A DNA stretch of 64,000 nt from Gekko japonicus (taxonomy: Eukaryota). The stretch's first letter is position 1; every line of letters begins with the position of its first letter. Of the stretch, positions 7,601 through 64,000 are shown piece by piece. The position numbers were made by a program, and so were the translations under genes. The stretch spans positions 1,180,853 through 1,244,852 of the forward strand of contig NW_015161956.1 of NCBI RefSeq assembly GCF_001447785.1. The letters run 5' to 3'. The notes below the pieces were generated by a model, which worked only from the letters and a program-made list of their open reading frames with translations, had not been told where the DNA came from and ran no database searches.

Positions 7601-9139
7601 CAGAAGATCCCACACATCATTGTCAAGTCCATAGATGGAAAAAAGGATGGGTTCATTACTGCTACCTATGCGTGCATTCATGTCCCCAGTTAACAAAGAG
7701 AGCACCTTCGAATAGACGTGTAGGATAGAAGAGATTTTACACTCTATATCTTTCCATAGACAAGAATAATCAATATAGATAGACCTGGCAGGATATAAAT
7801 AGTAAACAAGAACAGGGGATGGGCCTCAAAGTTGAGTTTAACAGTTCCCTAACCCTAACCCTTATGATCTTCTTTACATCAATCTTGATGGCCGGTACCC
7901 CCAATAAAAAGGATAAGTGGCACTTGACCTGCCACTTAGAAGACCAAAAAATGGTTTTCCCTCTATATGGAGAGATTTCAAGGAGAACAGTAAAAGGGAC
8001 ATATTTAACAGAATCTAGGTCATCACTCAGATAATCCCTATTTTTGGAGGGCTCCTCCTTGGGTGAACAGATTTTATTTGCATTTGTATTTATCTCAGAT
8101 TTAGCACACTTGGTATTACAGGTGCAGGAACTGCAATTCTTTGTAATAGAATCCAAACTGCTGAAAACCTTCTGCAGAGTGTCAACAGAAGGGTCTGTGA
8201 GGCTAAAATCTGGAGTAAATCTGAGGAGCAAGGATAAGTGCCACTTATCCTTTTTATTTAGCATTAGTATTGTGAGTACCATCAGCAGTATGGTCATCAG
8301 CATTAGGCAAAGAAGTATGACTTAAATCCAAAGGTGAATAAAGGCTGTTTTCTTCATGCTCCAAAACATCAAATCTATTAGATTTTGGGAAAGCATCAAA
8401 GAAGTCATCTAATTTACTCTGTTTGCTTTGCTTCCGAGAAAAATCTTCTTCTTGGTCACCAAATGGATATCGTCTTTTTTTTACTCATAGTTTGGCTTGA
8501 AGCAAAACAAGTTCAGAAATGCAGGTGGCTCCAATTAAGTGAATTTCACCAAGAGAGGGGGAAATGTAGTCTTTGCTCTGGGTATCAGAACAAAACCCAC
8601 ACGACAAAAAGGCTTTAGTAAAAAAATAAAATAAATAAAGTAAATAAAATAAATAAAGTAAACAAGCAGAAAAAGAAATAATAGTGCAGTAACAAACACT
8701 GACTAATAGTCCTTATAAGGACCAAGTGCGGAGCTTAACTAGAGTTCATTACTTTAAATATTAAAAATACTTGACTAAGACAAGGCTAAACTAAAATGCT
8801 AATAACAGTAAACACCAGTGGAAGATTAAGAGTCCTTGAAATAACCCAAATCAACTCCCACTCTAATAAAACAAACCAAAACCAGAGGGAGATCTAAGAA
8901 AAACACAGAGAATTAAAAACTAAATGTTGCGGTTAACTGGCAAGCAGCAAACGCCAAATGCCAAGCTCCCGAAGAGCCAACACAAAATCCCAATCACATA
9001 ACCAATAAACGAACAATGGACAAACAATAAATAAGCAAATACACATAAACAAAGGGCAGATAAAACGGAGCTCAAATGCAACACAACACTTCCCTCTCAG
9101 CTGCAGACTGGAAATCACATCCTTCAGCTATGAATTCTT
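4668..9139 (-). mobile_element. Near full-length degraded LINE (RTE-X-like): 5'UTR, ORF1, partial APE, RT, C-terminal Cys/His motif
   Basis: APE motifs GDMNARIG and GSDHLPL; RT motifs KAPGPD, FIDLKRAF and YADD; 3' AATAAA plus (TGGA)n tail; 11-bp TSD GAGCCCTGCCC (4657-4667, 9140-9150); many frameshifts. The clade is inferred. Confidence 0.88.
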
Positions 9140-10325: not shown

Positions 10326-34140
<23,815 letters not shown>

Positions 34141-39886: not shown

Positions 39887-42800
39887 TTCAAGTATTGAGG
39901 CAGGAGACGATGAACCATTAACAAAAACCTTTATTCAAGATTGCTTCAGGTCTCGAACAACAACGCTTGCAGTTTCTCTATTTATACCGTTGCACAGTGA
40001 AAGCAAACAACATTGTAACTCTGTATGATAGGCCTGATTGGCCCTAAGTGGAGCCATGTGATTGGTTGCTTCTAGTGTGGCTTTAGGACCAATGAACAAT
40101 CTTTATTCTTCAGCCAATAGTAATGCAAGGATTACGATACCATATTCAAACACAATAACTCAGAACATAACATCCCTCCCCCTTGGTTTAGACAACATAG
40201 TCCTTCAGGCGGGGGGGGGGGGTGCCGTGCCCGTTGGGACCGACGTGGTAAGGGCGTAACCCGTGGAGACTGGACCACAGGAGAATCGTCCCATGGGCTC
40301 ACTCGGCCCCTTGCTGTCCCGCAAAGATTCAGAGTCCAAGCGGCCAAACACCGGCTCACCCATCTGGCTGCGAGCCCTTGTGTTCTGGTTGGGTGACAGC
40401 TCACTGTGTAGACCTGGCGAGGCAGGTGGAGGCGGGAACCCCCTAGCGGTGACTGCTGGCTCAGTCAACTGCAGTTCCCCCTGACGTCCGACAGTCTCCC
40501 AGACAGGAGGTGGCATCGGTAATCCTGGGGTGGCTGGCATCTCCCGAGCGCCAACAAGGTGTGGAGGTGGGAGATCTCCCGAGTCAGCAATCTGTACTGG
40601 GGAGTGTTGCAAATCCTCATTGACAGCAGGAACTGGGGGGTGTTGCAATTCCTCATAGACAGCAGGAACTTAAGAGCGTTGCAAATCCTCATTGACAGCA
40701 GGAACTTGAGAGCGTTGAAAAATCTCATCCTGTCTCAGCCAGCGCCACCTCAGCTGGACGAGGTGCCAGCGGCAGGTTTGCCCTGTGCTGTCCTATACCT
40801 GGTACGAGATCGGCCCAGTGGCCCGGAGAATGGTGGCGGGAACCCAGCGAGGGCCTTCCCCGTAGTTCCAGGCATAGACCAGCTCGCCCGGATTAAACGA
40901 TTTGGTGGTCCTGGATGCGATGGGGTCCCGGCTGCTGTCTGGTGCCAAGTCCAGGTGGAGCCGGCTAAGGAAGGTGGATAGCCGGCGTCCCATGAGCAGC
41001 TCTGCAGGAGACCGACCTGTGGTGGCGTGAGGCGTGGAATGCTGTTGGAAGAGGAAACTGGTGAGGTCGGCACGGAAATCTCCCCCGTTCAGCCTGCAGA
41101 GCGCATCTTTCATAGACCTGACCATTCACTCTGCCTGGCCATTGGTCTCCGGATGGAAAGGGGCAGAGGTGATGTGCTGTATTCCCCGCTTGTCCACGAA
41201 GTTCTGGAACTCAGCGGAGGAGAATTGAGACCCGTTGTCGGAGACGATAAGGTCCAGTAGGCCGAAGGTAGCGAAAAGTGATCCAAATGACACGTGACGT
41301 CATTGAAGACACCTGGAACACCTCCAGCCACTTGGAGAATGCGTGGATGACCAGGAGAAGCGTTCTGCACCAGAAAGGCCCCACAAAATCGATGTGAATT
41401 CACGACCAAGGACCCCACGGCTTTTCCCAGGGGTGAACAGGGACAGCAGGTTCCTCCGGGCCTCAACTCTTGGCAGCGCTGGCAAGCTCGAACCCAGAGA
41501 TGTATGGCGTTGTCTAGGCCCGGCCACCACACGTATCCCCTCGCAATCGCCTTCATCTTCACAATCCCGGGATGACCAGCATGCAAGGCCTCCAGCACCT
41601 TGGTTCTGAGCGTAGGAGGGCCAATGACACGGTTTCCCCACAGGAGACACCCTTTACTGACCAACAATTCTGAAGCGCAAGACTGGAATGGCTGGAACTC
41701 AGCCTCGAGCTTCCCAGGCGGCCACCCCTGCCACACGAAGTTGAGAACTCTGCCAAGGGTCTGGTCACGGCGGGTCTGGAATGCGATGTCAGCCATGGCC
41801 AGTGGAGGCTGAGGAAGTTCCTCGATGAGAAGTGTTTCTTGCGCCGGAACCTCGTGCTCACTTGGCAGTGGCAGGCGGCTGAGGCCATCGGCATGCCCAA
41901 TGGATTTCCCTGGCCGGTGGACCAGGGTGAAATCATAGGCGGCCAGCAGGATGGTCCATCGCATCATCCGCGGAGACATGATTTGCGGGGTTTGACGGCT
42001 GCATGTGAAGATGCCGAGCAACGGCTTGTGGTCAGTGACGATCTCAAACTCCCGGCCATAAATGAAATCGTGGAACTTTTTTACGGCAGCGATAATGGCC
42101 AGTGCTTCCCGATCGATTTGGGCATAGTTCCTTTCAGCAGCAGAGAGCATCCTGGAGTAGAAGATGATGGGGGCTTCTCGCCCCAAAGGCAGCCGATGGC
42201 TGAGTACCGCCCCGATTCCATAGGGGGATGCGTCACACGACAACACGAGCGGTTCTTTCTCGTCATAGGGAACGAGGACCCTATTGGAGACTAGCAAAGT
42301 CTTGATGGCTTGGAAAGCGGCATGTTCCCTATGGCCCCACGCCCACAGAGCATTCTTGTCCAACAGTCTATGGAGCGGTTCTGCGACAGCTGCTTTGTTT
42401 GGTAAAAAAAGTGTGATAGAAATTGAGGAGCCCTAAAAAGGACTGCAGCTCTTTCTTCAATTTAGGCGGGGGTGCATTTCGGATAGCGGTGACCTTGTTG
42501 GGGGCAGGGTGTATGCCGTCTTTGTCCAAAACAAACCCAAGGAATTGCACAGTTGGTACGAAAAACTCAAATTTCTCCTTCTTCACACGCAGGCCGACCT
42601 TCTGTAACCGATGGAGGACTTCTCGCACTCGGGCAGACAGCTCGATACTGGAGGACCCTGTGATCAATACATCATCAAAATAAGGAACAACACCTGGTAT
42701 CCCTTTGAGGAGGTGCTTCATCAATTCCTGAAAAATGCCGGGGGCGACGCTGACTCCAAACTGCAGACGATTCACCTTGAAGGCACCCCGGTGCGTTACG

Positions 42801-43960
42801 ATTGTTTGTGCCTCCGCAGTGGCAGCGTCGACAGGGAGTTGCTGATATGCTTGCGCGAGGTCGATTTTCGCGAACACCTTGCCCCCAGAGATGGAGGCCA
42901 GCAGATGACTCACCACAGGGACCGGATAAGCATGTGGTTGCAAGGCCTTGTTGAGGGTGCACTTGTAGTCTGCACACAGACGGATGGAGCCATCTGGTTT
43001 GATGGGCGTGACGATCGGGGTGTCCCACTTCGCATTGGGAACTGGCTCCAATATGCCCTGAGCAATCAGCTTATCCAATTGTTCATCGATGCGTGCCTTG
43101 AGTGGAATGGCGCTTCGGCGTGGCTTCAGGCGAATGGGTGGAATGGCTGGGTTTAGGTTGAGGGATATTGAAGGCCCCTTGTAGCAGCCGAGTGTGGAGC
43201 TGAACACCTCCGGAAACTCCTCTGCGAAATTGGCAGCACTATCGAGTTCGGTGTGGTTTATGCCGACAACGTTGATGTCTAGTGCAGCGAACCAGTCTAG
43301 GCCAATGAGGCTCGTCTGGCGGCCCTCGATGACGAGCAGGTTGAGATGGCCATTGAAAGTCTTGTTTCTGTTAGTTACCAACTAGTTAAAAGTTGAAGGC
43401 TGCACTCTTGCAAATGGTGTGCAGGGTACCTCGGACAGATCTGGTGGAAGGTAGCCCATGACACGATTGACAGGGCGGAGCCAGAGTCCACTTCCATTTG
43501 GCAAGCACGACCTTCGATATATACAGTCACCTTGATTTTAGGGCAGGTATGCAGGCCCTGATGATTGTACAAATGGTTTGTGTAGTCTTTGGGAGAACTA
43601 GCCTTATTGCTGTACAGCGACCTCCGATCAAACGAACGAGGGAACGATCGTTGGTGCCTGCCGGAGGAACCCTCTGGACGACGGGACTTGTCAGACGCAG
43701 GACGGCCCTTTGATCAACAGACCTTAGCAAGGTGACCTTTCTTTCCGCATGAATGACAGATGGCCTCACGGAAATGACAGTCCCTTTGGGCATGCGCCCC
43801 ACCGCAGCCAACACAACCTCCCGTTCGCGGGCTTTTTCGAGAGCGGCACGGTTTCTGGTTGGCCCTCATTCGATACACGCCATCATCGGATGAGTCTGAG
43901 CAGTCGTCACTAGCGTCGGCCTGGTCTGTGCTGGCACCCTGGTGGATGGCATCAGTGCAG
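39887..43960 (-). mobile_element. Ty3/Gypsy element C (Mag-like), 5'-truncated; 3'LTR ~39887-40172
   Basis: Knuckles CVGCGGAHAQRDC and CHSCGKKGHLAKVC; protease VDSGS; RT YFDD; RNase H CDASPYG and TDHKPL; integrase HPGI...CQRCQ; PPT AAGGGGGAGGGA next to the LTR; 36-bp tandem repeat at 40596-40728. Confidence 0.92.
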
Positions 43961-43961
43961 C

Positions 43962-46550
43962 ATGACACGTGACCATCTTCAAGCTGAAGCCAATTATGAG
44001 ATCCTTTTGACTCATATAAATGAGTTGTTAAAACATAAATATCAGGGCATCAAACCAAATCAATTTGTCCAACCTGCTAATAGCTCTTGGTTTGATAAAG
44101 AATGCAAAGAACTGAAATCTCATCTACGCACCATTTATTGCAAATTCTGTAATTCTTCACTCTCTTATCTCCCTGAAAAATATCAAACATGCAAAAATCA
44201 CTTTAAAAACCTTATCAAAATCAAGAGGAGTACCTTTGTCAAAAAACAGTGGAAGCGATTACTAACTGCTGTCTCCCACAATGATTTAAAGCAATTTTGG
44301 GCATTAGTTAATACAGCACTCAGACCAGGAACTCCCAGCCCCTCTGTCATTTCTCCTTCTACTTGGTACCAACATTTTTCCGACTTATTTCAGGAGGAGG
44401 TTCTAGGTGCTTCCCATATTACCAACCTTGCCTTGGAAGATATGCCTGAATGGCCCCTTGTAACTCCTGAAGAAGTTGTTTCTCTTAGTGACCAACTAAA
44501 ATCAGGCAAAGCACCTGGTCCTGACATACCTGTGGAAATCCTAAAAGCTGGTCCTGAATGGTGGGCACCCCCTCTGGCTGCTTTTCCCCCCATGGTAAAT
44601 TCAACAGGTCATATGCCTACAGCACGGACTAATGCAGTTATAGTTCCAGTTTTTAAGAAGGGTGACCACTCAAATCTTGCAAATTTTAAGCATATCAGCC
44701 TTCTTTCTGTTATTGGCAAACTGTATGCTAAATTATTACAAAACAAACTTCATAATTGGCTAACAATTCAGAAATTTATTGGCCCAGAGCAAATTGGCTT
44801 TAGGCAGGGGAAATACACTCTGGACCACTGTTTGGTTCTTTCCCTCTTAGTTAATAAGTATACAGGGCGCAGAAGATCCAAATTATATGTGCTATTTCTG
44901 GATCTTAAAGGGGCCTTTGACTGTATCCCTAGGAATCACCTCTGGCAGAAGATGGCTAATACTTCCCTAGACAAGAGGCTCCTTTTTCTGATTAGTAGAC
45001 TATATACGTCCACCTCATGTCAAATCAGATACTCTGTTTCAGGGAGATAAACCCCAAAAATTTCTACCAGCAAAGGAGTCAAACAGAGCTGCGTTCTTGC
45101 TCCCCTTCTTCTCAACTTTTTCCTAAGCGATCTTGCCCCCTTTTTGGCCCAAGTTGGATGGCCATAGTCCCAAACTGGGTTCCACTAACATCCCAATTTT
45201 GCTTTATGCAGATGATGCGGTCCTATTGTCATGCTCCCATGTGGGTTTGCGCCGCTTATTGAACTGCTGCCAAGAGTACTGTAAAATCAACCAATTAGAA
45301 CTTAACGATGGAAAATCGTGTTAGTCTTCTCCAAATCTAGGAAGCAATTTACTTGGAAGGTGGGCGACCACAAGCTCAAACAAGTAAAACATTTTAAGTA
45401 CTTAGGTTTGCATTTCCAAGCTTGGACCCAACAATGTAGAGTAACAATTAACAATGCTGAAACAAATATTAATGCACTTTTGCGTTTTTATTTTTCTGAA
45501 AGAGGAAACCAATATGTTCCAGCCGCACTAAAAATCTTTAACCTGAAAATAGGTCCTCAATTACTTTACGGAGCCCCTATCAGGATTGAATCAATAAATA
45601 AGGCAGTTGAGCAAGTGCATTCAGGCTTTCTTTGGAAGATCTTGGGTATTCCATCATGTGTCCCATATGCGGCTTTATCCCTAGAATGTGGCCAAAATCT
45701 TATGGCTACAAGGACGTGGCTTACGACCTTTAAGTTTTGGCTTTGATTACATTATAGATCTGATCCCTCTAGCTACTGCATCCAACTCTTGACTGAAACT
45801 AACTATTCCCCTTGGCTGGTCATTATTGAAAATAAATTAAGAACACTGAATATCTCCTTCGAATCTTTGCTCCCACTTTCAGAATTGAAGGCAATGCAAA
45901 CAATAAGGGACAGACTATTTGAGGCAGAGCAGTTTGAACTATATAACGCAGCTAATAAGACATGTTCTCCCGTAAATCATGGGATATTGCCCATTGTGGG
46001 TCATCCTGCTAGCTATCTTTACCACCTTCAGACCAGCATTATGTAGAACCTTTTCACTTGCTAGGTTCAACGCTCTCCCTTCAGTAATTTTAACTGGGAG
46101 CTTTAATAGTATTCCTTTCGTTAACAGACTATGCCCCTGTGCAAGTGGGTCTATTGAAACAGTATGTCATGTGTTACTGGAATGTTGTTGTTATGCCAAC
46201 GTTTGGCACAACATTTTATCGCCATTACTTGGTGGCATCACAGAGCTTCCTGAGTCACATAAACTGCTATATCTACTAAACAACATTGATGAAAATATAA
46301 CTGACACAGTGGCAAAGTTCTTTCAGGTTGCTCTTTTTACACATACTACAGTATTGTAACACAAAACTTGTTTTTGGGAGATATGGAAGTGAGACTTATT
46401 TATATGGATTTTAGATTATTTTAGAACGGGGTGTTGTTCTTTTTCCTTCCCCCCCAGTTGGTATATGTGCCTTATGTTTTATTTATTTATCTATTTGTGT
46501 ATTTTCTCCAATGTCAATGCCAATAAAAGTAACTGAACTGAACTGAACTG
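43962..46550 (+). mobile_element. 5'-truncated RTE-X-like LINE (RT and C-terminal domain)
   Basis: KAPGPD, FLDLKGAFD, LLYADD, RLCPC...ETVCHVLLEC; AATAAA plus (AACTG)n tail. Confidence 0.9.
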
Positions 46551-51399: not shown

Positions 51400-52360
51400 G
51401 AGAGAAAAATACACGAACAGAAAATGCTTCCTCCTCCATCCAGCCACTGGACACCCCGCCCCCAAAACCTGCAGGTGTCCCTAACCTGAAAGCAGCGCTC
51501 CGCCACTATGTGCCACTCGCGAGAGGGGGGGCGCTGCTGTGGGCGGCGCTGTTGACTGCAAAGCCCCACTGAACTTCCTCCCACGTAAGAGCCCTCAGAA
51601 CTGCGGGCTTTTCAGCCAGGAAGCGCGGAGCGCCCACGAGGTCGGGGAAGCCTTCGACTGAGCGCAGCGCGGCCCTTCCTCTGCAGGGCAGCTAAAAAGG
51701 AGCGGCCCAACAGCGGCCACGTCCACGAGGCCAGGAGCGCTTTATGGGCCTTTCTAAGCAGATGCTTACGACCCTCGACCCTCGTTTGCTCCACAGGTCT
51801 GCCCCGCTGAAAGAAACGATTTCTGAAGCCTTCCCTTCGCGACGCCACTAAGCGACACGCGGGCTTATTAGCAGTTCGGATCCGATACGGTGGGGCCGGG
51901 GGGAAGGGGGCGAGGCACGTGATCGGGTGTAGGCCCGCATCTCGCGGGAGCGCGCGTGGTCTGTGTCCAGCGGGCTTTGTCCGCCTAGGGGGTCCTCCTG
52001 TGGTGGCGTGGCGGGGATTGCTGTGAGGAAGCCCGAAAACTTGATTCTCCACTCTCGCGGCCGCCCCCTGCCCAGCTTCGCGTGACGCCCGCAAGCTAAA
52101 CAAAAATATTGCTCGGGCAGGGACAAGATCGCGCGCCAGTTCCCCCCAGGTGAGCCAACGTGGAGGAAGAGCTCGTGCCGCTTCCCACGTGTCTCTCCGA
52201 GCCCCTCCTTACGAAGGGATTGTGGGCGTCGCGGGGGGAGGGGGATGATATTCCCTGGGGGGAGGGGCGAAGCCTCAGATTGGCTGTATGGGGGGGGGGG
52301 GAGAGTGTCGGCGGCCGAGTGTTGTATGCCGTGTGTTGTGAGTGACCTTATATGTCGTCG
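51400..52360 (+). promoter_or_regulatory. CpG island promoter and non-coding first exon of the MGA-like gene; splice donor after 52149
   Basis: Non-repetitive GC/CpG-rich block about 1.3 kb upstream of the first coding exon. Strong donor CAG|GTGAGC at 52149/52150. CACGTG E-boxes at 51916 and 52186; CTCGCG-core motifs near 51517, 51941 and 52054. Confidence 0.8.
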
Positions 52361-53541: not shown

Positions 53542-53698
53542 TTCTCTCTGATGACTGTATTCGTAGTGCTAACCGATTCCTCTGTAGTTCAGATACTTTA
53601 TTGTTTAATTTGTTTCTCAGGAAATTGGCCACGAGAGGAATGCTGTCAGGAGTGTACAAGATTTGGAGCTGATATGAGAATATACAACAGTACATGTG

Positions 53699-54723
53699 AT
53701 GGAGAATCAACCAGTTGTGTTACGAAACCAGGATGGCAAGAGAGCATCATGTGCAGTACCTGCTTTTCCCATCCTTGTGAAAGAGCCACTGGGCAGTGGA
53801 AGAGCTGATCAAAGCACCTTGCTTTCAAATCACAATAGCTTTGGTCTTGTGAGCAGTGCAATATCATCAGTAAATTCTAAAGTGAAGACTTGCCTTCCTG
53901 TGGATTGTACCTCTGGAGGCATTACTGTCACCTTGGACAACAATACCATGTGGAATGAGTTCTACCATCGCAATACAGAAATGATTCTCACTAAGCAGGG
54001 AAGGCGGATGTTCCCATATTGTCGATACTGGATCACAGGCCTGGAATCCAACCTGAAGTATATCCTGGTCATGGATATTTCTCCCGTTGACAACTACCGC
54101 TATAAATGGAATGGGCATAGTTGGGAGCCCAGTGGAAAAGCAGAACCTCACGTCTTGGGGCGAGTATTTATTCATCCGGAATCACCTTCCACAGGTCATT
54201 ACTGGATGCATCAGCCAGTGTCTTTCTACAAACTCAAACTTACTAACAATGCCTTGGACCAGGAAGGGCACATCATCTTGCACTCCATGCACCGCTATCT
54301 ACCTCGCCTACATTTGGTGCCTGCCGACAAAGCCACAGAAGTTATCCAGCTGAACGGTCCTGATGTCTGCACCTTCACCTTCCCACAGACAGAATTCTTT
54401 GCTGTGACAGCCTATCAAAACATTCAAATTACACAACTAAAAATAGACTATAATCCATTCGCAAAAGGTTTTCTGAAAGATGGACTGAGAAGTAGTTCCC
54501 AATGTGAGGCAAAGCAAAATGGTAGGTTAGAGTATGAAGTCTTTCCTAATAATGACAGATGCCCATGTTCTCCTGAAGCTGATATTTTGGATCCTGGACA
54601 GAGAGGCCTAAATGGTTTATACAACAACCAGAAGATGTGTAATACTGATTTGGAAAGAGAGTCATTCAATTCAGACATCAATGAGCCTGATGAACCAGAA
54701 TTAAAGCAGGAGACATCTGAATT
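53699..54723 (+). CDS. MGA: MGA-like first coding exon containing the whole T-box (exon acceptor at 53620/53621)
   Basis: ttctcag|GAAAT acceptor; ATG at 53699 in context GTGATGG; donor GAATT|gtaaga. Confidence 0.93.
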
Positions 54724-57700
54724 GTAAGATCATATCTGTATATTTTTGGTGATGGTTGGGTTACAGTGAGCTTCGTTAGTTATTGCTGTGCAATACTTTG
54801 AAATACTGTGATGTTATAGCTTCTAAAGGAGAAATACCTGCATGTAGTTTTCTGCAACAAGAAATGGAACGTGGTTTTGACTTTGGAAACTATGTAAACT
54901 TTTCTAGCCCATATTCATGTTGTGCACTGCCCCCTTAGTTACTGCTTTTGTTTTCTCATATATGTTACATGAGTCTGTTTTTAAAATAAGTACTTACTTC
55001 ATTTATGCCCAATGGAGATACAAAGAATCTTGCATTGTTCTTCGCTCCTTCCACAACAACCCTGTGAGGTAGGTGAGGTGGAGAGTGTGATTGGCTCATG
55101 TTACCTAGCAAGTTTCCTAGCAAGTTTCCATGGTAGCATGGGGAGTCAAATCTGGGTCTTATCACTACACCACACTCTTACCACTACACCACACTGGCTC
55201 CCATACATGTTCATTTCTTTATCATAGTAGTAGAAAGTTGAGCAAAAAGGCCATCTCAAACGGCAGTATCTTTCTGACCATCACATGTAAATGGGCAGTG
55301 GGTATTGTCATTTTCTCTATTTATGTGAGTTCTTTTAATGGCATCTACTTGGCTTCCGCTAGAGACAGAATAAGTACCTACCTGCTTCATTGTTTCCTTT
55401 ATCTACTTGGCTTCCGCTAGAGACAGAATGAGTACCTACTTGCTTCATTGTTTCCTTTGCCAGGACTCAGGTATTTCTTCTGTTCCATGTGCTGATTTAT
55501 TACACTATTATATGATAATACTTCTGAGTAAACATTAGTCCCATTGATTACACTGACACCTGCTTCCAAGTTAGTATGCTTTGGGCTACAGCATAGAAAT
55601 AAATCCTGTTCCAACCAGTGGGACTGCAGTGCTATAATAAACTGAATTGAGGAATTAAAATTACTTCTGAGTAAACATGGTTATATAAGAGTCATCGTGG
55701 AAACAGACAGGATGATAGCAATTGCTTTATTCTGTTTTCAGGTTTTTTTAAATGTCAGTACATTGAAGTCTGATCATGTGTATGCTTAATCAAAAATAAA
55801 CACCACTGAATTCAATGGCACATTACCAGTAGAAGTGCATAGAAAGATAGAATTGCCTGTAAGGCTACATTTACATGCATACCTACATGAGAGCTGGTCT
55901 CACTGAACTGAATTAAAGTTCCATGAAAATGATAATAGATGAGAATAATTATTCATTGCAAATAACATGTAAATATAAATGTTTGAGTTTATAGTGTCTG
56001 AAAACTTTATTGGTGTAGAAAAGTTTTATTATTGTTTCAGTTAATTAGTGTTCTCTTTTTCTTCAAGAAATTCTTCAAGATTATTGCAGGAAAAGATCAT
56101 AAGGTAGGGATAGGGTCTGCTAAAACAATGGGCTTAGTTTTACAGACCATGAACTGAAGGAGTTCATGGAACAGATCTCTTCCCCCTGCGCTCTGCAGCC
56201 TCCTGCACCCTGGGAAAACAGCTACAAAGGTTGGGGAAGCCTCACGAATAGATTGGACTTAGGCAAGGGCTGCTGCCACAAGAAGGAATTGGCAGACGTT
56301 GTGCCCTCACCTCTTGCTACGGTTGTCAGTCTCCAAGTGGTTGGAGATTTCCCGCTGTTACACTTGATCTCCAGGTAACAGAGATCAGTTCCCCTGGAGA
56401 AAATGGTGCTTTGGAAAGGTAACTCTATGGCATTATATCCCATTGAAGTCCCTCCCCCCTCTAAAACTTGCCCTCTTGGGGCTCCCCCCCAAATCTTCAG
56501 GTATTTCCCAGTCAGGGCTGGCACCCTACCTCTTGAACAAACCTGTTTGCAGAAGAAATCATGCAGACCAAGTGTCCGTGTGTGATTTCTGTTGAACTCA
56601 CCTTAAACAATAGCAATCTGTGCTGCATTCTGCTCTGTTTGGAAGAGAACAGGACAGAACAAGGTTCCTGACCTTCAGAGGCGCAAGAGGCTGCAGGAAG
56701 AAGGTAGTGAGATCTGTTTCATAAGCTCTTTCCATCCATGGCTTGTTGTGTTGAACCTAATATGTTGGTTGTACAGCCATTGCTTGGTATTTCTTTTCTA
56801 CAAATGCAACATATGAATCTTTAGAGGGTAGAGAAACTACTAAGTATAATATTTATTATATAATTTTGATTTTTTTTCCCGTTAGTATAGTTTTTCTTAA
56901 TTTTTTTTCTCCAGTCCAATAGCTAACCCTTGTGAAAGTGACTCTCACATGAAATCTCTGCTGATCTCAAGTGGGGACATCAATGTTTCCATTAAAGAGG
57001 AGCTGGTAGATGATTCTGATTATGTTTCAAATGTCAATATGGAAAGGATGCAGTTGAAACAGGAAGACATCAACAAAGAGACAGAAGATTTTTCCTGTAG
57101 TGATGATGATCCCATATTGGAGAAGCAGTTGAAGAAACATAGTGAAATGGGAGAATCCCACAAGCGATCACACAATAGCCCATTGGGTGTTGCCAAAACA
57201 AAAATGCTAAAATTGGACAATAGAACAATGTCTGCAGCTTCTATAGAGGCCTATGAGGTCACCAAGAGTATGGTAAAGATCTCTGCTCTTCAGTCCATTT
57301 TGTCTTCTTGTCGGACAGATAAATCCCTTTTGAAACATTCAGAACATTTATTTCCTGCTGGTTTTGAAAACATCGCTAGTCCAATTAAAGCTGTAGGGAC
57401 AAAAATTAAAAACTTTTTTTCTGGAAACAATGAAGAACAGAAATATTGTTTAGTCAAAGATGTGCCATGGGAAAACATTCAAATACATAACAGCCATTCC
57501 ATAAAGCAAAAACCATTGAACCTCAAATGCACAAACTCAGCAGCAGCCATAAATAATGTTGGAGGAAAAAAGCCAAATACAGCGAAGAAACCTGTGTTGA
57601 GTACTGATGTTAATAGTAATCCAAGTGCTGTGTTATCAGGACCATGTAGGAGAGGAAGACCTCAGAAGCTGAAGTCAGAGGTTGAACAACCCCTGAAATA

Positions 57701-60700
57701 CATCAGAAAGGCTATTATGAAGAACCGTTGTGCCCCTTTGAGATCATGTTCTGACCACCCAGAGTTTATACTTGATCATGAGGATGTGGATGGAGTCCTG
57801 TTTGTATCCTTTGAATCAAAGGTAAATCTATGGGTCTTAATTTAGTATTCTGAAACACAACAGTTACTATAGATTTCAGGTGGGTAGCCATGTTGGTCTG
57901 AAGCAGTAGAACATTTCATTCTGATGCATGCACATGAAAGCTTATACCCAGAATTAAACGTTGGTCTTAAGGGTGCCACTGGACTCAAACTTTGTTCTAC
58001 AACAGTTAATAGTTCCTTCTCAGTCTTAGCTATGAAATGTGAGATTTTGGAAAAGGGGTTCCCCCATGCTTAAAATTGAACGTTGTGGCTTATTTTTATT
58101 AAACCCACTAGCTTTGAGTTTTGTAATTTGGATCTTGAATGGTATATATGATAATGCAAAATTGTATTATCCAGACCAGTCTATTTCAGTTGGTTTATAT
58201 TGTCATATGTTACTTACATGACTTTTGGAAGATTGTCTCTCTTGTGAGCCTGGAATACTGTTTCATGTAAGACATTTGATATTTATTTTGTCCCTGTTTA
58301 TATATAGGAAGATCTCAATAATCACACCATTGATCAGTCTGGGAGAACAGGAGAACCACTGAATGAACAGACTGTTTTACAAATTACATGTGATTCAGGT
58401 ACTGACTTAGCATGAAGTAATTGTAATTTATTTCCTGCTATTTAGAAAAATATTTAGAATAATGCTAAAATGGTATATTCACATCATAACCACTGAATGT
58501 GAATTTTTTCTTCTGGCCGGCTGTCAAGAGAAGCCAAATCTGCTCGAAATAAAGCTCTTAGAAGATTTGAAGTCCTTCAGGCATAAACAAGTGATACATC
58601 CCAGTCTTCAAGAAGGTATTTACAGATATTCAGACCTTAGATCTCATGAAAGATAAGTAGAACATATTGAATTTGCATTGGCAAAAACTGTTGCTAAAGT
58701 GATACAGATACAGTTTTATGGTTGAAATTATATGTGCAGATCCATTATCCAGGAAAAAAATATTCAGGAAGAAGCTCTCTTTTCTTGCATTTATACTATG
58801 GAAACTGTTTAGCTGTACTTTTATTTGACATAGTACTGTGAATAATGCACAGGTTTATTGCCCACCATCCTGTGGATTGGATTCAGTGATCTGCTAGCAG
58901 GAGGACCTGGAGGCTACAGATCTTTCCTCTGGTCCCCGTTCCCTCAGCAGTCCACAGGAAAATTGATTCATGGCGTCTTGGGACTCACATGTACTGATAA
59001 CCATGTGGACAGAGGGCTGCATTGAGAAGGGGACAAAATTGCTTCATCTCCCATCACTGAGCTGTGCTCATAGAAGCAGGAAGCAGTTTCATCCCTTTCC
59101 CCTCAAGGTAGTCTCCTGACCAAAGTGCCCTGTTGTCCACTCAGGTTCCATGAGCTCAGGAATCAGTTTTCCCAGGGGGCCCTGAGGAGATTGCTGAAGC
59201 GGAGGGGAACACAGCACGGAAACATGCTTCTTGCAGTGGTGGTTCTTTAGATCCAATCCGTTTCATGGAGTCCTATATTTGTTTTTGAGGAGGTTGGTTA
59301 TCCACATAATTGAATTTGAGCTGTAAAGATACTTGAGGTGGTATTTTCTTCTTCCAGTGGGACTGAAGCTGGGTTCTGTGGACCCAGCAGTTAGCATTGA
59401 CCTAAAATATTTGGGTGTACAGCTTCCTCTGAGATCTTCAAAGGATCGTGTATTTGGTAACAACCAAGGAATAAGACCCAGTTCTTTAGGTAAATGGGTT
59501 TTAAAATCCATAAAGTGTTAGAATATTAGTAGGCAAGAAAAGCTTGAATGTTCTAATATTAATAAAATCTTATTCTTTTTTCTAGAAGAACATTTTGTTA
59601 ATCTTGCTACCTAATGAAAATAATTTCTAGTAAAGGCAGTTGCTATCTGTAAGTCTGGTAAATAGTTTTCTGTTAAAAATCTCTTTTGTCTTTTCATTTG
59701 GTCTCTGGTTAGTAGGGTTGCCAAGTCCCCCCAGGGGGTGGGGAAACCCCCGCCCAAGAGGCCCGTCCCCGCTGGCGCAGATCGGGCCACCTGGGGAGAC
59801 CCCACCCACAAAGTGTTAAATGTGCCTGGCATGAACACGTCACCTGGAGGTGACGTAATCGCGTTGGACACGTTGTGGGGGGACGCTCTGTCATCCGAGG
59901 GAAAACTCTATGGTTTTCCCTCGAATGATTGTGGCCCTGCCCCCAACGTGCCCGATGTGATTACTTCACTTCTGGGTGACGTAATTGCAGCGCGTGTGCT
60001 TTGCTCGCACACCAGGAAAATTCAAAGGGACGTCCGGGACTCCCCCCGCTATTCCCGAGGTAGGACTTGGCAACCCTACTGGTTAGTAAGATAACTTTGC
60101 TGTCTTTACTTCTAGATGCTAGCCTTTCCTTCATTTCCAGGACTGGGAAAACAGATGATTTTAGAAAGATAAAAGGATGGCAGGAAAAAGTCCACAATAC
60201 TTCTAGGCATGAAGGTAAGAAGTAGATTCTGTATGGTATGGTGATTCTACAAACAGAAAAACTTAATTTTTTCTCAGTGAGAACAAAGTAAATAAATAAT
60301 AACCCTACACTTTCCTAACAATCAGTTTTCTGTTGTTTTCGTTTTTATGAGGAACTGAAGATTTGATTGATACTGAAATATTTTTGTTTATGCAGTACAA
60401 ACACATTTATATATAACACCAGTTCCCATGATTTCATCACATTTGATTGTGACCCCCCCAAACCAGCACTTCTGTGGGACTGAGTAAATGGTTCTGTTTG
60501 AGTTCTTAGCATTAAATTTAGCAGACAGCAGCTGTCAAGACTGTTGAGAGATAGGCAAAAACTGTCATCCCCAAGAAAGTGGAGTGGCTAGAGGTGGGAG
60601 TATGTTTTGCTTGTGAATAATTGATGCTGACTATTTTATTCTGTTTGTAGCAACAATCGTTTTTGCTTCCCTGTGTTCCTAGAAGAACATCAAGCTTCAA

Positions 60701-62641
60701 ATCCTAACCATTTTTCCATTGATGGAAGGCACTTAGAAAGAAGGGGTGGTTTTTGCTAATTTCCCTTCTCCTACTGCAGGAGCGCCCCACTTCATCCACA
60801 CATGTCCACACTTCTTCCAGATGTTCACCAGTCCCTGGGGCATGACAGTCTGCAGCCAAATAGTGTAGACAAGAACTTTTGTTACTTCAGATGTTGATCT
60901 GCTCATCCTAGATAACATCTAAGTCCAAGGTTTTTTCTTTACTTTTGAGAAATGTCTTTATGTGGCCCTTTAACAAAATAGAACAAAAAGGGAAATACAT
61001 CAGGTGATAGTTGACTTATTATTGTACAAAGTTCCTATGTGTTTCACCATGCAGGCTTTGTCAGGGGGAATCTATAAAAACATAATTTTATACTTAATAC
61101 AAATAATAAAAGGACCCCTTAATAAAAATTATTACAAAAGTATTTTAAAAGTATTGATTAAAAAGACATGATCAGAATTAATTTCAAAATTTGATACATA
61201 TTAGTCAGTATACCATATAAGATGAATAAATTATACATTGGAAATGAAACAAGACAATAAAATATATAATATATGAAGCAAATGCGGACCAAAGCATTCA
61301 ACTAGTGCTGGAATTGTCCACAGCAATTAAGTTCTTTTACTAGTGAAGACTGACATAGTGTTTTTTTTAATGTATAGAGATTAGCTGAACATGGCCAGAA
61401 GTTCCAGATCAGAATTTAACCCATGAGGGGTCAAAGTCTACAATCTTAAGATCCACTCCATCTCCTTTTTTAATAGGGCTTTTTCATTGTGATGGTAAGA
61501 TTTATATAAATCCCCAAAAATGAAATCAGTGGGTCCATGTTCTTTTTCCATAAAATGCTATACCAAAGGTGCACCAACTGTTCTGCGAAGTATGTTGTTC
61601 TCAAATACTGTTATATGAGTTTTAATTTTCTAGAGGTCTTCCCTATGTATAATTAAAAGAACATCTGATGACATATATAATCATATTTGAGTTGCATGTT
61701 GTGAAGTTGTTTAAAACATATTTTTTGTCAAAGGGTTGATAAAACACTTCATATTTTGAGTTAGGTTACAACAAATGTCCACATCTAAGATGGCCTTGGT
61801 CAAACCTGCTTCTGGAATGGTTCTTTGTAGGTTCATGGGAACAAAGATGTTGCTTTAAAAAAAATAAAATAGGGATGTATTGTCAATGGTCTCATTTACG
61901 CAGATTTTTCAGGGAAACTATTTTGTGTTTCCTTTGAAGCCAAGGTTAGATTCCACATGCTTTTAGGTGTTTGGGATTTAACATCTTTCTGTGTAACGTT
62001 CTGTGGTTTATTCAGGTACCATTCTGGAGGGCTCCTTGAAGAACCGATCTGCCTTCTGCAGTGATACACTCGATGAATATTTAGAAAATGAAGGGAAACT
62101 AATGCAAACAAGTATGGGATTTCCTCCTAACTTCTCCAGTTGTCCTGTGGTTCACCAGTTTTCATCTGAAAGCAGCAACTATGTACAAGCGCAACACAGC
62201 ATTCTAAAGAAAAAATGCACTCCACCCACCTCTTACAATTTTAAGCCACTATCTCTGCCTTCCTTTAGAAAGAGAAGAAGAAACATTAATAGGAAAAAAG
62301 TGTCTTCTAGAGGCAGCATAAAATCCAGTAATTCTGCAGTGGCTTCACTTGCTTTGTCAAAGGAGCAATACCACATCCAAGTCTTGGAAGACAGAGTTAC
62401 TAATCCTCAGCCAAACAGCGAAACAGATAATACAGTAAATGTTCTTATGACGCCAGACTTAGATGAAGATGTGCAGGGAAAACAGGGAACTGTTTGTTGG
62501 TCAACATGGAACAGTAACATATGTACAACTGATACAAAACTGATGGATCTGGAGGGTTGTGCGTTACAGGATGGGAAGCCACAAACTTATATTACTGAAG
62601 AACGTGCGGACTTTTCTCTGAGAACTCTGTTCATTTCACAG
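53699..62641 (+). CDS. MGA: MGA-family T-box transcription factor (MGA or a divergent MGA-like paralogue). Joined exons: 53699-54723, 56915-57821, 58308-58398, 58520(or 58529)-58615, 59358-59489, 60116-60214, 62016-62641 (about 990 aa to this point).
   Basis: MGA-type T-box (EMILTKQGRRMFPYCRYWITGL...KIDYNPFAKGF) and MGA-specific motifs SDDDPILEKQLK, EDVDGVLFVSFESK, HKQVIHP, SIDLKYLGVQLPL, SRTGKT, LKNRSAFCSD.LDEYLENEGKLM, KLMDLE..ALxDGKP.TYITEERAD. Exon phases are consistent. Orthology versus paralogy is unresolved. Confidence 0.9.
54992..55202 (-). mobile_element. Squam3-like SINE, degraded
   Basis: Reverse complement begins gggagccagtgtggtgtagtggtaagag. Confidence 0.7.
55343..55458 (+). repeat. 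Tandem duplication, 2 x 58 bp
   Basis: atctacttggcttccgctagagacagaat...tgtttccttt occurs twice, with 2 mismatches. Confidence 0.9.
56318..56528. mobile_element. Old hAT MITE (TAGGGTTGCCA family)
   Basis: Degenerate TIRs TACGGTTGTCAG / CTGGCACCCTA; TSD CCTCTTGC/CCTCTTGA. Confidence 0.75.
56915..57821 (+). CDS. MGA: MGA-like coding exon 2 (907 bp; SUMO-type IKEE/LKQE, AT-hook-like RRGRPQK)
   Basis: ctccag|TCCAA...CAAAG|gtaaat; open frame ending DVDGVLFVSFESK. Confidence 0.9.
58308..58398 (+). CDS. MGA: MGA-like coding exon 3 (91 bp)
   Basis: atatag|GAAGA...TTCAG|gtactg; encodes EDLNNHTIDQSGRTGEPLNEQTVLQITCDS. Confidence 0.8.
58520..58615 (+). CDS. MGA: MGA-like coding exon 4; homologous acceptor reads CG, with an in-frame alternative AG giving a start at 58529
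   Basis: Encodes GCQEKPNLLEIKLLEDLKSFRHKQVIHPSLQE; donor GAAG|gtattt. Confidence 0.75.
59358..59489 (+). CDS. MGA: MGA-like coding exon 5 (132 bp)
   Basis: ttccag|TGGGA...TTTAG|gtaaat; encodes VGLKLGSVDPAVSIDLKYLGVQLPL... Confidence 0.9.
59713..60078. mobile_element. hAT MITE (366 bp)
   Basis: TIR TAGGGTTGCCAAGTCC at both ends; perfect 8-bp TSD CTGGTTAG. Confidence 0.92.
60116..60214 (+). CDS. MGA: MGA-like coding exon 6 (99 bp)
   Basis: ttctag|ATGCT...TGAAG|gtaaga; encodes DASLSFISRTGKTDDFRKIKGWQEKVHNTSRHE. Confidence 0.9.
62016..62641 (+). CDS. MGA: MGA-like coding exon 7 (626 bp), ending at the start of DUF4801
   Basis: attcag|GTACC...CACAG|gtaagc; encodes SLKNRSAFCSDTLDEYLENEGKLM...KLMDLEGCALQDGKPQTYITEERADFSL. 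Confidence 0.9.
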
Positions 62642-63223
62642 GTAAGCTACAGTGCCAGTTGTCCATCACCCAGTGATTGTTTACGGTTAGATGTGCATGT
62701 GCTAAAAATGGGGCATGTGTATCTATAGCTATTTTTCTTCTCTAGTCTTTTTGTCTGTCAAATGTGCCCAGTTAGGTTTTGCATGACAACCACATCTTCT
62801 ACCTGATAGTTCTTTTACACACACACAAAATCATAATAACTTGTTTCAAGCCCTCTATTTTGTAGAATGAATTGGCAGTAGTAGTGTCCATAGTAATGTA
62901 CACCCTGTAATTTCCTGGATCAGCCCAAAGTATTTTATTTCAAAAGGACTTTGTGCGCTATTTATTTATTTATTTTCTTCACTTATACCTAGCCTTTTTC
63001 CCCAACGGAGATTTGGACCTGAGTCTCCCAGATACTAGTTTGGCACTGCATATGAATAAAACATTGCCGTTCCTCATACTTATTCAGCACAGACTTTCCT
63101 CTTACTCAGAGGTATGCTTAATCTGCATTGATGAAATACATAATTTCTTAGATTGTTATATACATATGGTTGTATCAAAGGCCAGAGTTTCTGTCCATTC
63201 TTCCTTTTAATTATGATTCTTAG

Positions 63224-63380
63224 TTCCAAATAAAGCTATTGCAGTGTCTAATCATACCCGAGTGGGTTCAAGTGAAGTTGATGGGTTTGGAGGATAGTGC
63301 ATCACGGCAGGGGAACACACAGACTTACGTTTCAGAAGAGCAAGCAGACGATTCCCTGTCAACTTTCAGGGCCATTGAGG
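63224..63380 (+). CDS. Putative extra exon: diverged duplicate of the 3' end of the preceding MGA exon
   Basis: Polypyrimidine tract plus tag at 63223, phase 0 and in frame. Encodes QVKLMGLEDSASRQGNTQTYVSEEQADDSLST. Candidate donors after 63380 or 63388. Confidence 0.5.
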
Positions 63381-63524
63381 GTGGGGAGGTCAGCTGTTGT
63401 GCTCCTGAAGCCAGGATTTCATGCAGAATACATTTTATTTTAATGCAGTTCTGGCTGCAGTGACTAGCATTGCAGAAAAGTCAGAGCACAGTAAAACCAC
63501 TATGTCAGCTGTCCTGCCTTTTAG

Positions 63525-63680
63525 CAAGGCTGAAAAGTAAACCCTCGCCTAACAGGATCATGCGTAGCCTGTCAACCAAGCCAGCATTGGAGGAAGGCAA
63601 GACAAGCCACCACAGCTGATGTCTGCTACAGTAATTGCCAGGCTGCAGCCTGCTAACAAGGTTGTTGTCTTCAGTGGTCT
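63525..63680 (+). pseudogene. Decayed remnant of the MGA Cys-rich DUF4801 exon; possible terminal exon with TGA at 63617-63619
   Basis: ARLKSKPSPNRIMR...ALE resembles ASLKTKPIHTIIRK...ALE. KVVVFSG in another frame resembles KVVLVKGG. The CRLGCVC block is absent. Confidence 0.5.
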
Positions 63681-64000
63681 GTTCTTTCCTTCTTCCTTTC
63701 CTTGTACCCAGCTCCATAGTTTTGTCTACCCAAAGCAGCAGTTAGTGTATTGTAGCAAGATAAAACAACCTTTCCTTCTCTTTTCCTTAATAATTTTGAA
63801 CCCTGTATGTTCAAAGACATGAGCAAAAAAAAACTTCTGACAACTTTATTTGAAATCACTATTTATAAAAATAGAGATGTAATTTGGGTAAAGTGAGTAA
63901 AGAGAAGTCGGTAGATGACAATGTGATAGTGTAGGTAGCGTAAGTCTGTCAGTTGAGTTCAGGCTGGGTAATATCTCCCATTTGCTTAATGGACAGAGCC

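What the first reader, a model, noticed from the sequence alone, without database searches (positions are those of the whole stretch)
53699..63680. Candidate truncated, fast-evolving MGA paralogue: T-box kept, DUF4801 decayed, bHLH-Zip unreachable
Seen: the T-box is nearly identical to MGA and ~990 codons are open. Blocks I recall as strongly conserved are eroded: PVVHQFSSESSNYVQAQHSILKK versus PVVYQLPTKSTSYVRTLDSVLKK; the second GRP motif and the Q-rich linker are lost. One acceptor is mutated. The only in-window homologue of the Cys-rich DUF4801 exon is frameshifted. Every splice route I can trace ends at a stop (63461, 63531, 63538 or 63617), giving at most ~1075 aa. Known: MGA is ~3000 aa, scaffolds PRC1.6 and binds MAX through a C-terminal bHLH-Zip. 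A mouse germ-cell splice variant lacking the bHLH-Zip has been reported to antagonise PRC1.6. Inference: a tandem duplicate may encode a stand-alone T-box competitor of MGA, with full-length MGA further downstream. Together with the E-box/E2F promoter motifs and uORFs, this would be a gene-encoded PRC1.6 anti-repressor circuit. This is a hypothesis only, because the window ends ~400 bp after the stop.
Basis: partly seen in the sequence, partly recalled or inferred. Interest (0 to 1): 0.8.

Follow-up and report, generated by a model that had tools for sequence, protein, structure and literature searches.

The report
Gecko MGA-like paralogue, cut by window
This is the first 989 codons of a gecko's second copy of the Polycomb/MYC-network factor MGA, an old, fast-evolving, already annotated squamate duplicate that is not truncated: the window ends mid-gene, and the full 1750-residue protein keeps its MAX-binding bHLH-Zip but has lost the DUF4801 segment.

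Summary
The sequence facts hold: seven + strand exons (53699-62641) give 989 open codons with an intact T-box. They match the RefSeq protein 'MAX gene-associated protein-like' of Gekko japonicus (P0169, 1750 aa) at 99-100% over most exons.

The 'truncated, bHLH-Zip unreachable' reading is a window-edge artefact.
- A spliced RNA contig of this species joins 62641 in frame to at least 2.6 kb of sequence outside the window (FPGQKSATSS...).
- That is the same junction as in P0169, Gekko kuhli and Heteronotia.
- P0169 carries a bHLH-Zip at residues 1206-1254 and the conserved MGA C-terminus.

The 'paralogue' idea is right.
- Trees split squamate MGA into a canonical clade and an 'MGA-like' clade, each 100/100 and each holding geckos and other lizards. 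An AU test rejects a gecko-only duplication (p=1e-62).
- The MGA-like clade evolves about twice as fast. Its T-box stays 97% identical to canonical gecko MGA.
- The DUF4801 segment is diverged in most MGA-like proteins and undetectable in Gekko and Heteronotia.
- At 63266-63364 there is an unexpressed relic of the KLMDLE...TYITEERAD motif, followed by a stop at 63461.

Canonical MGA in Gekko itself and the tandem arrangement were not shown. The gene is already annotated. I found no paper on the duplication.

The parts
14865..34137 (+). Context: 3' part of the upstream gene TYRO3, with kinase-domain exons at about 14865-15089 and 15609-15845 and the last coding exon inside 33535-34137.
   Evidence: ORF translations. 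PK_Tyr_Ser-Thr hit. The best solved-structure match is TYRO3 (72.5 bits) against AXL (46.3) and MER (33.8).
51500..52300 (.). CpG island, the putative promoter and first non-coding exon region of the MGA-like gene. CACGTG lies at 51916 and 52186, and GCGGGA at 51944.
   Evidence: GC 0.63-0.66 and CpG o/e 0.8-1.06. The promoter role is inferred from position only.
53699..54723 (+). Coding exon A: start codon and T-box domain (residues 77-259, about 53927-54475).
   Evidence: Pfam T-box E=1e-73. TBX5 structure match E=9e-65. 99.7% identical to P0169 residues 1-342. Donor GT at 54724.
56915..57821 (+). Coding exon B (907 nt), with the single GRP/AT-hook-like motif; ends ...VLFVSFESK.
   Evidence: tblastn to P0169 343-647 at 99.3%. 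AG at 56913-56914 and GT at 57822. RNA loose end before 58306 carries the end of this exon.
58308..58398 (+). Coding exon C (91 nt).
   Evidence: RNA joint to exon D, reported as 58396>58527 with the cut 2 places further right. Splice sites.
58529..58615 (+). Coding exon D (87 nt).
   Evidence: RNA joints reported as 58396>58527 and 58613>60114, each with the cut 2 places further right. 100% identical to P0169 675-703.
59358..59489 (+). Coding exon E, a 132-nt in-frame cassette (VGLKLGSVDPAVSIDLKYLGVQLPL...). It is included in P0169 but skipped in the RNA reads seen.
   Evidence: tblastn to P0169 701-747. AG/GT. The 58613>60114 joint skips it in X17, X18 and X1.
60116..60214 (+). Coding exon F (99 nt).
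   Evidence: RNA joints reported as 58613>60114 and 60212>62014, each with the cut 2 places further right.
62016..62641 (+). Coding exon G (626 nt). It holds the eroded PVVHQF... block and motif copy 1 (KLMDLEGCALQDGKPQTYITEERADFSLRTLFISQ, 62537-62641), and ends in phase 0 with the donor GT at 62642.
   Evidence: RNA joint 60212>62014, seen in 8 raw reads and one contig. The same contig runs on from 62641 for at least 2.59 kb into letters not in the window; the first 30 read FPGQKSATSS in frame. The junction matches P0169, P0001 and P0170.
63266..63364 (+). Intronic, unexpressed relic of a second copy of the KLMDLE..TYITEERAD motif (VQVKLMGLEDSASRQGNTQTYVSEEQADDSLSTF).
   Evidence: Motif HMM E=3e-11. 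BLASTP 17/34 identical to the exon copy, E=8e-08. About 70% DNA identity. RNA depth 0-0.05 in 63201-63400 against 5-17 on exon G.
63461..63463 (+). In-frame stop (TGA) that closes the relic's reading frame.
   Evidence: Translations. No DUF4801 signal on either side.

Best explanation
SHOWN
- Window 53699-62641 (+) holds the first seven coding exons (989 of 1750 codons) of the gecko gene that RefSeq calls 'MAX gene-associated protein-like' (MGA-like). It lies directly downstream of TYRO3.
- It belongs to a squamate-wide paralogue clade that split from canonical MGA before geckos diverged from other lizards, and that evolves about twice as fast.
- The gene is transcribed and correctly spliced.
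- Exon G is joined in frame to exons beyond the window end.
- The near-identical annotated protein keeps a T-box (97% identical to canonical gecko MGA), a bHLH-Zip with the H..E..R basic-region residues, and the MGA C-terminus.
- That protein lacks the equivalent of canonical residues about 1040-2065, including DUF4801.
The motif at 63266-63364 is a dead, unexpressed second copy.

INFERRED (about 40% likely)
- The protein still pairs with MAX and still binds T-box and E-box sites.
- The aa 967-1300 segment around DUF4801 is what binds L3MBTL2 in human MGA. Without its DUF4801 part, the Gekko/Heteronotia form would recruit PRC1.6 poorly.
- It would then act as a PRC1.6-uncoupled, possibly competing, relative of MGA.
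For: GENE MODEL AND IDENTITY
- Exons and phases.
- Identity to P0169 (Gekko japonicus MGA-like, 1750 aa): 99.7/99.3/100/95.7/100/99.1% for exons A, B, D, E, F and G.
- TYRO3 lies upstream on the same strand.

TRANSCRIPTION AND CONTINUATION
- RNA-seq joints are GT..AG. A 3318-nt spliced contig runs on from 62641.
- Gekko kuhli P0001 and Heteronotia P0170 share the junction ISQ|FPGQKSATSS.

DOMAINS
- P0169: T-box plus HLH at 1206-1254, no MGA_dom.
- bHLH-Zip alignment with H-T-x-x-E-R-x-R-R and the zipper kept.
- Colinearity with canonical MGA skips about 1040-2065.

PARALOGY
- Two 100/100 clades. AU test p=1e-62.
- Canonical MGA with T-box, MGA_dom and HLH exists in five other gecko genera.
- Per-domain identities.

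DUF4801
- A DUF4801-segment HMM hits the other MGA-like proteins at 30-57 bits, but not Gekko or Heteronotia and not the window tail.
- Human MGA aa 967-1300, including DUF4801, binds L3MBTL2. MGA lacking 1003-1304 co-precipitates less L3MBTL2, does not raise L3MBTL2 levels, and suppresses proliferation little or not at all (PMC8266391).
Against: - The part of the gene beyond 64000 was never seen as DNA.
- Continuity past 62641 rests on one RNA contig (30 letters shown), on the RefSeq model and on orthologues.
- The HLH scores only just above Pfam's cut-off (22.0 vs 20.7 bits). The bHLH-Zip is 58% identical to canonical MGA, so MAX binding is not assured.
- Some PRC1.6 or HDAC partners bind MGA outside the DUF region (PMC8266391), so loss of DUF4801 need not uncouple it fully.
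- A DUF-like exon could still exist downstream and be used in an isoform I did not see.
- Canonical MGA was not retrieved for Gekko itself.
Confidence: 0.82

Rival explanations
1. One reading: the locus encodes a truncated, stand-alone T-box protein of at most about 1075 aa that cannot reach a bHLH-Zip. It would act like the mouse germ-cell Mga variant, or like intronic-polyadenylation forms of human MGA. This could be the only product or a regulated minor isoform.
For: - Reading through the donor at 62642 meets a stop after 28 codons, at 62726-62728.
- RNA run X17 shows depth of about 3-4 in 62801-63200, where other introns show about 0.
- AATAAA hexamers lie near 63054 and 63229.
- Truncated MGA forms with dominant-negative action are known in mouse germ cells (PMC8102552) and in leukaemia (cited in PMC8266391).
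Against: - The dominant spliced product leaves 62641 for exons outside the window.
- P0169, P0001 and P0170 all continue to a bHLH-Zip.
- No reads begin or end in clusters (table 6).
- To my eye (not checked against a repeat library), 62990-63150 resembles a transposon tail, and 62955-62985 is a simple repeat that the read tool skipped. Intronic reads there may therefore come from other loci.
- X16 and X18 show almost nothing in 62801-63000.
Confidence: 0.08
2. It is simply the single, canonical MGA orthologue of geckos, fast-evolving in this lineage. On this view its grouping with the 'MGA-like' genes of other lizards is a long-branch artefact.
For: - It occupies the position right after TYRO3, where MGA lies in human (order recalled from my own knowledge).
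- No canonical MGA of Gekko japonicus or G. kuhli was returned.
- Both MGA-like subclades have long branches.
Against: - Five other gecko genera have both a canonical MGA of about 3000-3200 aa (T-box, MGA_dom, HLH) and an MGA-like gene. In three of them (Heteronotia, Paroedura, Sphaerodactylus) both are seen on the same chromosome.
- The window's gene sits inside the gecko MGA-like clade at 100/100, next to Heteronotia and Paroedura MGA-like.
- The AU test rejects gecko monophyly, with a log-likelihood difference of 254 and p=1e-62.
- The word search only sees proteins of 0.55-1.75 times the query length. A fragmented Gekko model would be missed.
Confidence: 0.04
3. It is a decaying or unprocessed pseudogene copy of MGA.
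For: - Conserved blocks are eroded and DUF4801 is lost.
- A dead motif copy lies in the intron.
Against: - 989 codons are open across seven exons with intact splice sites.
- Spliced transcripts are seen in three RNA-seq runs.
- Orthologues of 1600-2400 aa are kept open in at least 11 squamate species.
- The T-box is 92-96% conserved among gecko copies.
Confidence: 0.03

Closest known systems
Canonical MGA (MAX gene-associated protein / MAX dimerization protein MGA), the scaffold of PRC1.6
   Same: - N-terminal T-box, 97% identical to canonical gecko MGA.
- The same exon layout over the first about 1000 codons.
- The KLMDLE..TYITEERAD motif.
- A C-terminal bHLH-Zip and a conserved C-terminal tail (in P0169).
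- A position just after TYRO3.
   Different: - It belongs to a separate, squamate-only paralogue clade.
- It is 1750 aa rather than about 3000-3300.
- It lacks DUF4801/MGA_dom and about 1000 residues of the middle region.
- It evolves about twice as fast.
- Its bHLH-Zip is only 58% identical to canonical MGA.
- Invariant blocks such as PVVYQLPTKSTSYVRTLDSVLKK are eroded.
'MAX gene-associated protein-like' genes of other squamates (Paroedura, Euleptes, Sphaerodactylus, Hemicordylus, Elgaria, Lacerta, Podarcis, Zootoca)
   Same: - The same clade (100/100).
- The same T-box plus weak-HLH architecture.
- The same fast rate.
   Different: - Those proteins keep a diverged Cys-rich DUF4801-like segment (30-57 bits with a custom HMM).
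- The non-gecko ones carry two tandem coding copies of the motif.
- Gekko and Heteronotia jump from ...ISQ straight to FPGQKSATSS. In this window the second copy survives only as an intronic relic.
Engineered human MGA lacking 1003-1304 (delta-DUF) (PMC8266391)
   Same: It lacks the DUF4801 part of the L3MBTL2-binding segment (human aa 967-1300) while keeping the T-box and bHLH-Zip.
   Different: - This is a natural gene with a much larger deletion and many substitutions.
- It coexists (in related geckos) with an intact MGA.
- No binding data exist for it.
Mouse germ-cell Mga splice variant with a premature stop (PMC8102552), and intronic-polyadenylation MGA forms
   Same: They show that MGA-derived proteins missing one functional module can interfere with PRC1.6.
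   Different: - Those forms lack the bHLH-Zip and arise by RNA processing of the single Mga gene.
- This is a separate gene whose main product keeps the bHLH-Zip and lacks the DUF module instead.

Membership tests
MGA family (dual T-box / bHLH-Zip MAX-network factors) | N-terminal T-box DNA-binding domain | tested here: met
   PF00907, E=1e-73, 247.5 bits, residues 78-260 of the 343-aa ORF 53696-54724 (= residues 77-259 of the protein). 97% identical to the canonical gecko MGA T-box.
MGA family (dual T-box / bHLH-Zip MAX-network factors) | bHLH-Zip in the C-terminal part | tested here: met
   Not in the window. In P0169, which is 99-100% identical to most window exons: PF00010 at 22.0 bits (cut-off 20.7), residues 1206-1254. 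The basic region H-T-x-x-E-R-x-R-R and the zipper align with canonical MGA. The link to the window rests on the RNA contig and the RefSeq model.
MGA family (dual T-box / bHLH-Zip MAX-network factors) | DUF4801 / MGA_dom (PF16059) after the KLMDLE..TYITEERAD motif | tested here: not met
   No PF16059 hit in P0169, P0001 or P0170. A custom HMM of the DUF4801 segment finds nothing in them or in window 62642-64000 (best E=0.29).
Canonical MGA orthologue group | Falls in the clade of canonical MGA of the same taxon | tested here: not met
   Canonical gecko MGAs form their own 100/100 clade, and the window's gene falls in the MGA-like clade. AU test p=1e-62 against gecko monophyly.
Squamate MGA-like paralogue clade | Groups with the MGA-like genes of geckos and other lizards | tested here: met
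   100/100 support in two trees. 80-90% identity to Gekko kuhli and Heteronotia MGA-like.
Squamate MGA-like paralogue clade | Second copy of the motif right after the first (coding in Hemicordylus, Elgaria and lacertids) | tested here: inconclusive
   A relic copy lies 625 nt after exon G (E=3e-11). HMMs of first and second copies score it equally (36.5-39.6 bits). Homology with the second coding copy therefore rests on position and a shared VQV prefix only.
Truncated, bHLH-Zip-less MGA forms (mouse germ-cell variant, intronic-polyadenylation forms) | Mature mRNA ends in a stop before the bHLH-Zip | tested here: not met
   The main spliced product leaves 62641 in frame and runs on for at least 2.59 kb. 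A minor read-through isoform is not excluded.
PRC1.6 scaffold function | Binds L3MBTL2/PCGF6 and MAX | not testable with these tools
   Needs co-immunoprecipitation. The only data are for human MGA, where aa 967-1300 bind L3MBTL2 (PMC8266391).

The most novel reading that the evidence does not exclude
Squamates carry an ancient second MGA gene. Its Gekko/Heteronotia version is a natural 'MGA delta-DUF':
- it has the same T-box as MGA;
- it has an E-box-competent bHLH-Zip that still pairs with MAX;
- it has no DUF4801, the domain at the centre of the L3MBTL2/PRC1.6-binding segment.

It could then occupy MGA sites, or take up MAX, without building PRC1.6. That would make it a gene-encoded counterpart of the mouse germ-cell splice variant that relieves PRC1.6 repression of meiotic genes. 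Its own promoter, a CpG island with two CACGTG and one GCGGGA, could be under PRC1.6/MYC-network control. A minor read-through isoform ending at 62726 would add a T-box-only form.
Probability: 0.2. Interest if true: 0.7.

Novelty: new variant of a known kind. Interest (0 to 1): 0.4.

Why it matters
- MGA is the scaffold that brings PRC1.6 to germline and MYC/E2F target genes, and it is a tumour suppressor. In mammals it is single-copy.
- Squamates offer a natural experiment: an old duplicate with an almost unchanged T-box, a drifting bHLH-Zip, and a DUF4801 module that is degraded in steps. That module is diverged in most lizards and gone in Gekko and Heteronotia.
- Comparing partners and targets of the two copies, and of MGA-like proteins with and without the DUF-like segment, could separate MGA's DNA-targeting role from its Polycomb-scaffolding role.
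- For the scan, the lesson is more ordinary. A gene cut by the window end looked truncated, and the gene model is already in RefSeq.

Tried and rejected
- Looked for an intact DUF4801 exon in 62642-64000 in all six frames, by translation, by tblastn with Paroedura, Hemicordylus, Podarcis and Elgaria segments, and with a custom HMM. None was found. The 'CQLSCLLARL' resemblance to CQLGCVCASLAS is not statistically supported, so I dropped it.
- Tried to assign the relic motif to the 'second copy' lineage with separate HMMs. The scores were equal, so no assignment was possible.
- Tried to fetch genomic context of the gecko genes with the look-up of encoding contigs.
- Searched for a canonical MGA of Gekko with two word searches and among short representatives of the big search. 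None was found. The length filter means this says little.
- The scan's earlier notes held nothing on MGA beyond this same finding.
- Paper searches for the squamate duplication found nothing.
- I did not build or search a joined spliced model of the window's exons. Exons were searched one by one by reference, and the RefSeq protein P0169 stood in for the whole product in trees and alignments.
- The N run 18961-19362 was left as it is.
Full report
WHAT IS IN THE SEQUENCE

The + strand of 53699-62641 carries seven exons with canonical AG/GT borders:
- A: 53699-54723
- B: 56915-57821
- C: 58308-58398
- D: 58529-58615
- E: 59358-59489
- F: 60116-60214
- G: 62016-62641

They total 2967 nt, that is 989 codons ending in phase 0. 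Exon A holds a full T-box (PF00907, E=1e-73; best solved relatives TBX5/TBX3). A CpG island at 51500-52300, with two CACGTG and one GCGGGA, lies 1.4 kb upstream.

Upstream on the same strand are tyrosine-kinase exons whose best solved match is TYRO3 (72.5 bits, against AXL 46.3 and MER 33.8). From my own knowledge, TYRO3 is the neighbour of MGA in human.

IDENTITY OF THE GENE

A full HMMER search with exon A and cluster look-ups led to Gekko kuhli KAL8169434.1 (P0001, 1658 aa). A word search led to 'MAX gene-associated protein-like [Gekko japonicus]' (P0169, 1750 aa).

P0169 residues 1-989 lie colinearly on the seven exons. Exons A, B, D, E, F and G match at 99.7, 99.3, 100, 95.7, 100 and 99.1%. 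The short exon C aligned only as part of a hit running into its flanking intron (82%). The window is therefore Gekko japonicus or a very close relative, and the gene is already annotated in RefSeq.

IS IT TRUNCATED? NO

I laid three raw RNA-seq runs of the species and one Logan contig set on 58001-64000.
- GT..AG joints link exons C>D, D>F (skipping the 132-nt in-frame cassette E) and F>G.
- One 3318-nt contig covers exon F and exon G. From 62641 it runs on for about 2.59 kb in letters that are not in the window.
- Its first 30 letters read FPGQKSATSS in frame.
- P0169, P0001 and Heteronotia P0170 have exactly this junction...TLFISQ|FPGQKSATSS....
- RNA depth over 63201-63600 is essentially zero, against 5-17 on exon G.

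P0169 has an HLH at 1206-1254 (PF00010, 22.0 bits against a cut-off of 20.7). The basic-region residues H-T-x-x-E-R-x-R-R and a well-aligned zipper are present. The conserved MGA C-terminus is present too (53% identical over about 400 residues between Gekko kuhli P0001 and Candoia MGA).

IS IT A PARALOGUE? YES

- A second word search found canonical MGA (T-box, MGA_dom and HLH, about 3000-3300 aa) in the geckos Heteronotia, Euleptes, Eublepharis, Paroedura and Sphaerodactylus, and in other squamates.
- Four of these gecko genera (all but Eublepharis) also have an MGA-like gene. Where contigs are listed (Heteronotia, Paroedura, Sphaerodactylus), both genes sit on the same chromosome. The same holds for Hemicordylus, Podarcis, Lacerta and Elgaria.
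- IQ-TREE trees of the first 1070 residues split squamate MGA into a canonical clade and an MGA-like clade. Each has 100/100 support, and each holds geckos and non-geckos.
- An AU test rejects a gecko-only duplication (log-likelihood difference 254, p=1e-62).
- Root-to-tip length is about 0.60 in the MGA-like clade against about 0.3 in the canonical clade.

Per-domain identities:

| Region | Window gene vs canonical gecko MGA | Among gecko MGA-like | Among canonical gecko MGA |
|---|---|---|---|
| T-box | 97% | 92-96% | 97-98% |
| bHLH-Zip | 58% | 75-83% | 97-98% |

The block PVVYQLPTKSTSYVRTLDSVLKK is invariant from gorilla to canonical geckos, but here it reads PVVHQFSSESSNYVQAQHSILKK. The lost second GRP is not specific to this copy, because canonical geckos lack it too.

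DUF4801 AND THE RELIC

Pfam finds no MGA_dom in any MGA-like protein at E of 0.01 or better. I built an HMM from the DUF4801 segment of 89 canonical MGAs.
- It detects a diverged Cys-rich homologue in Hemicordylus, Elgaria and the lacertids (35-57 bits).
- It detects one in Sphaerodactylus, Euleptes and Paroedura (30-41 bits).
- It finds nothing in Gekko japonicus, G. kuhli or Heteronotia.
- It finds nothing in window 62642-64000 (best E=0.29).

The loss therefore maps to the Gekko+Heteronotia branch.

The motif before DUF4801 (KLMDLEDCALWDGKPRTYITEERADLSLTTLL) occurs twice in tandem in the non-gecko MGA-like proteins and once in gecko ones. The window has a second, non-coding copy at 63266-63364. 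It scores HMM E=3e-11, is 17/34 identical to the exon copy and about 70% identical as DNA, and is followed by the stop at 63461.

By position this copy looks like the remnant of the exon that still codes in other lizards. HMMs of first and second copies cannot tell which lineage it belongs to, so a local Gekko duplication is not excluded.

Against Candoia MGA, the Gekko kuhli protein skips the equivalent of residues about 1040-2065.

HOW IT LIKELY WORKS

Shown: an expressed, spliced gene for a 1750-aa protein with an MGA-type T-box and a bHLH-Zip, without DUF4801.

From the literature:
- Human MGA aa 967-1300, which contain DUF4801 (1043-1084), pull down L3MBTL2.
- MGA lacking 1003-1304 co-precipitates less L3MBTL2 and does not raise L3MBTL2 levels. 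It does not slow mouse lung-tumour cells and only mildly slows a human MGA-mutant line.
- Other partners bind elsewhere on MGA (PMC8266391).
- A mouse germ-cell Mga variant without the bHLH-Zip impedes PRC1.6 (PMC8102552).

Inference (about 40%): the Gekko protein still pairs with MAX and binds T-box and E-box sites but recruits PRC1.6 poorly. It would then act in parallel to, or in competition with, canonical MGA. Ordinary subfunctionalisation, for example tissue-specific use, is at least as likely.

A minor read-through isoform ending at 62726 is possible. X17 has some depth in 62801-63200. That stretch holds a simple repeat and, to my eye (not checked against a repeat library), a transposon-like tail, so I give this isoform about 8%.

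LIMITS

- No canonical Gekko MGA was returned. The word search sees only proteins of 0.55-1.75 times the query length.
- I built and searched no joined spliced model. Exons were searched singly, and P0169 stood in for the whole protein.
- The N run was left untouched.
- No paper on this duplication was found.

VERDICT

- Observation: largely real.
- 'Truncated, bHLH-Zip-less' interpretation: wrong, a window-edge effect.
- 'Fast-evolving paralogue that lost DUF4801': right.
- The gene is already annotated as MGA-like, but it is an uncharacterised and moderately interesting variant of MGA.

Noticed in passing
window 32878-33151 and 33448-33721: Two 274-nt copies, 100% identical and 570 nt apart, just before or overlapping the last TYRO3 coding exon. 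This is either a very recent tandem duplication or an assembly artefact.
   Followed up: partly
window 59600-60000 (intron between exons E and F): RNA and contig depth jumps to 200-270, with many loose ends and non-GT/AG 'joints'. This fits a high-copy repeat (SINE-like) rather than part of the gene.
   Followed up: no
window 22000-27000 (+) and 40000-44000 (-): Two LTR-retrotransposon pol regions (RVT_1, RT_RNaseH, integrase zinc-binding domain) with long ORFs. One lies inside the TYRO3 region and one between TYRO3 and the MGA-like promoter. LINE-type reverse-transcriptase ORFs lie at 5412-8321 (-) and 43914-46356 (+).
   Followed up: partly
window 59358-59489: Exon E is a 132-nt in-frame cassette. 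It is included in the RefSeq model but skipped in every RNA read or contig that crossed it here. The Paroedura isoform X2 also lacks it, which suggests conserved alternative splicing.
   Followed up: partly
window 51500-52300: The CpG island upstream of the gene holds 2 of the window's 7 CACGTG E-boxes (51916, 52186) and a GCGGGA (51944). This is compatible with MYC-network/E2F6 control, but I did not test it against chance for CpG-rich DNA.
   Followed up: partly
related proteins: MGA-like genes were returned for geckos, Cordylidae, Lacertidae and Anguidae. None was returned for snakes, iguanians, Tiliqua or Rhineura.
   Followed up: no
window 18961-19362: A 402-base N run (assembly gap or mask) lies inside a LINE-like ORF region. 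I left it as it is.
   Followed up: no
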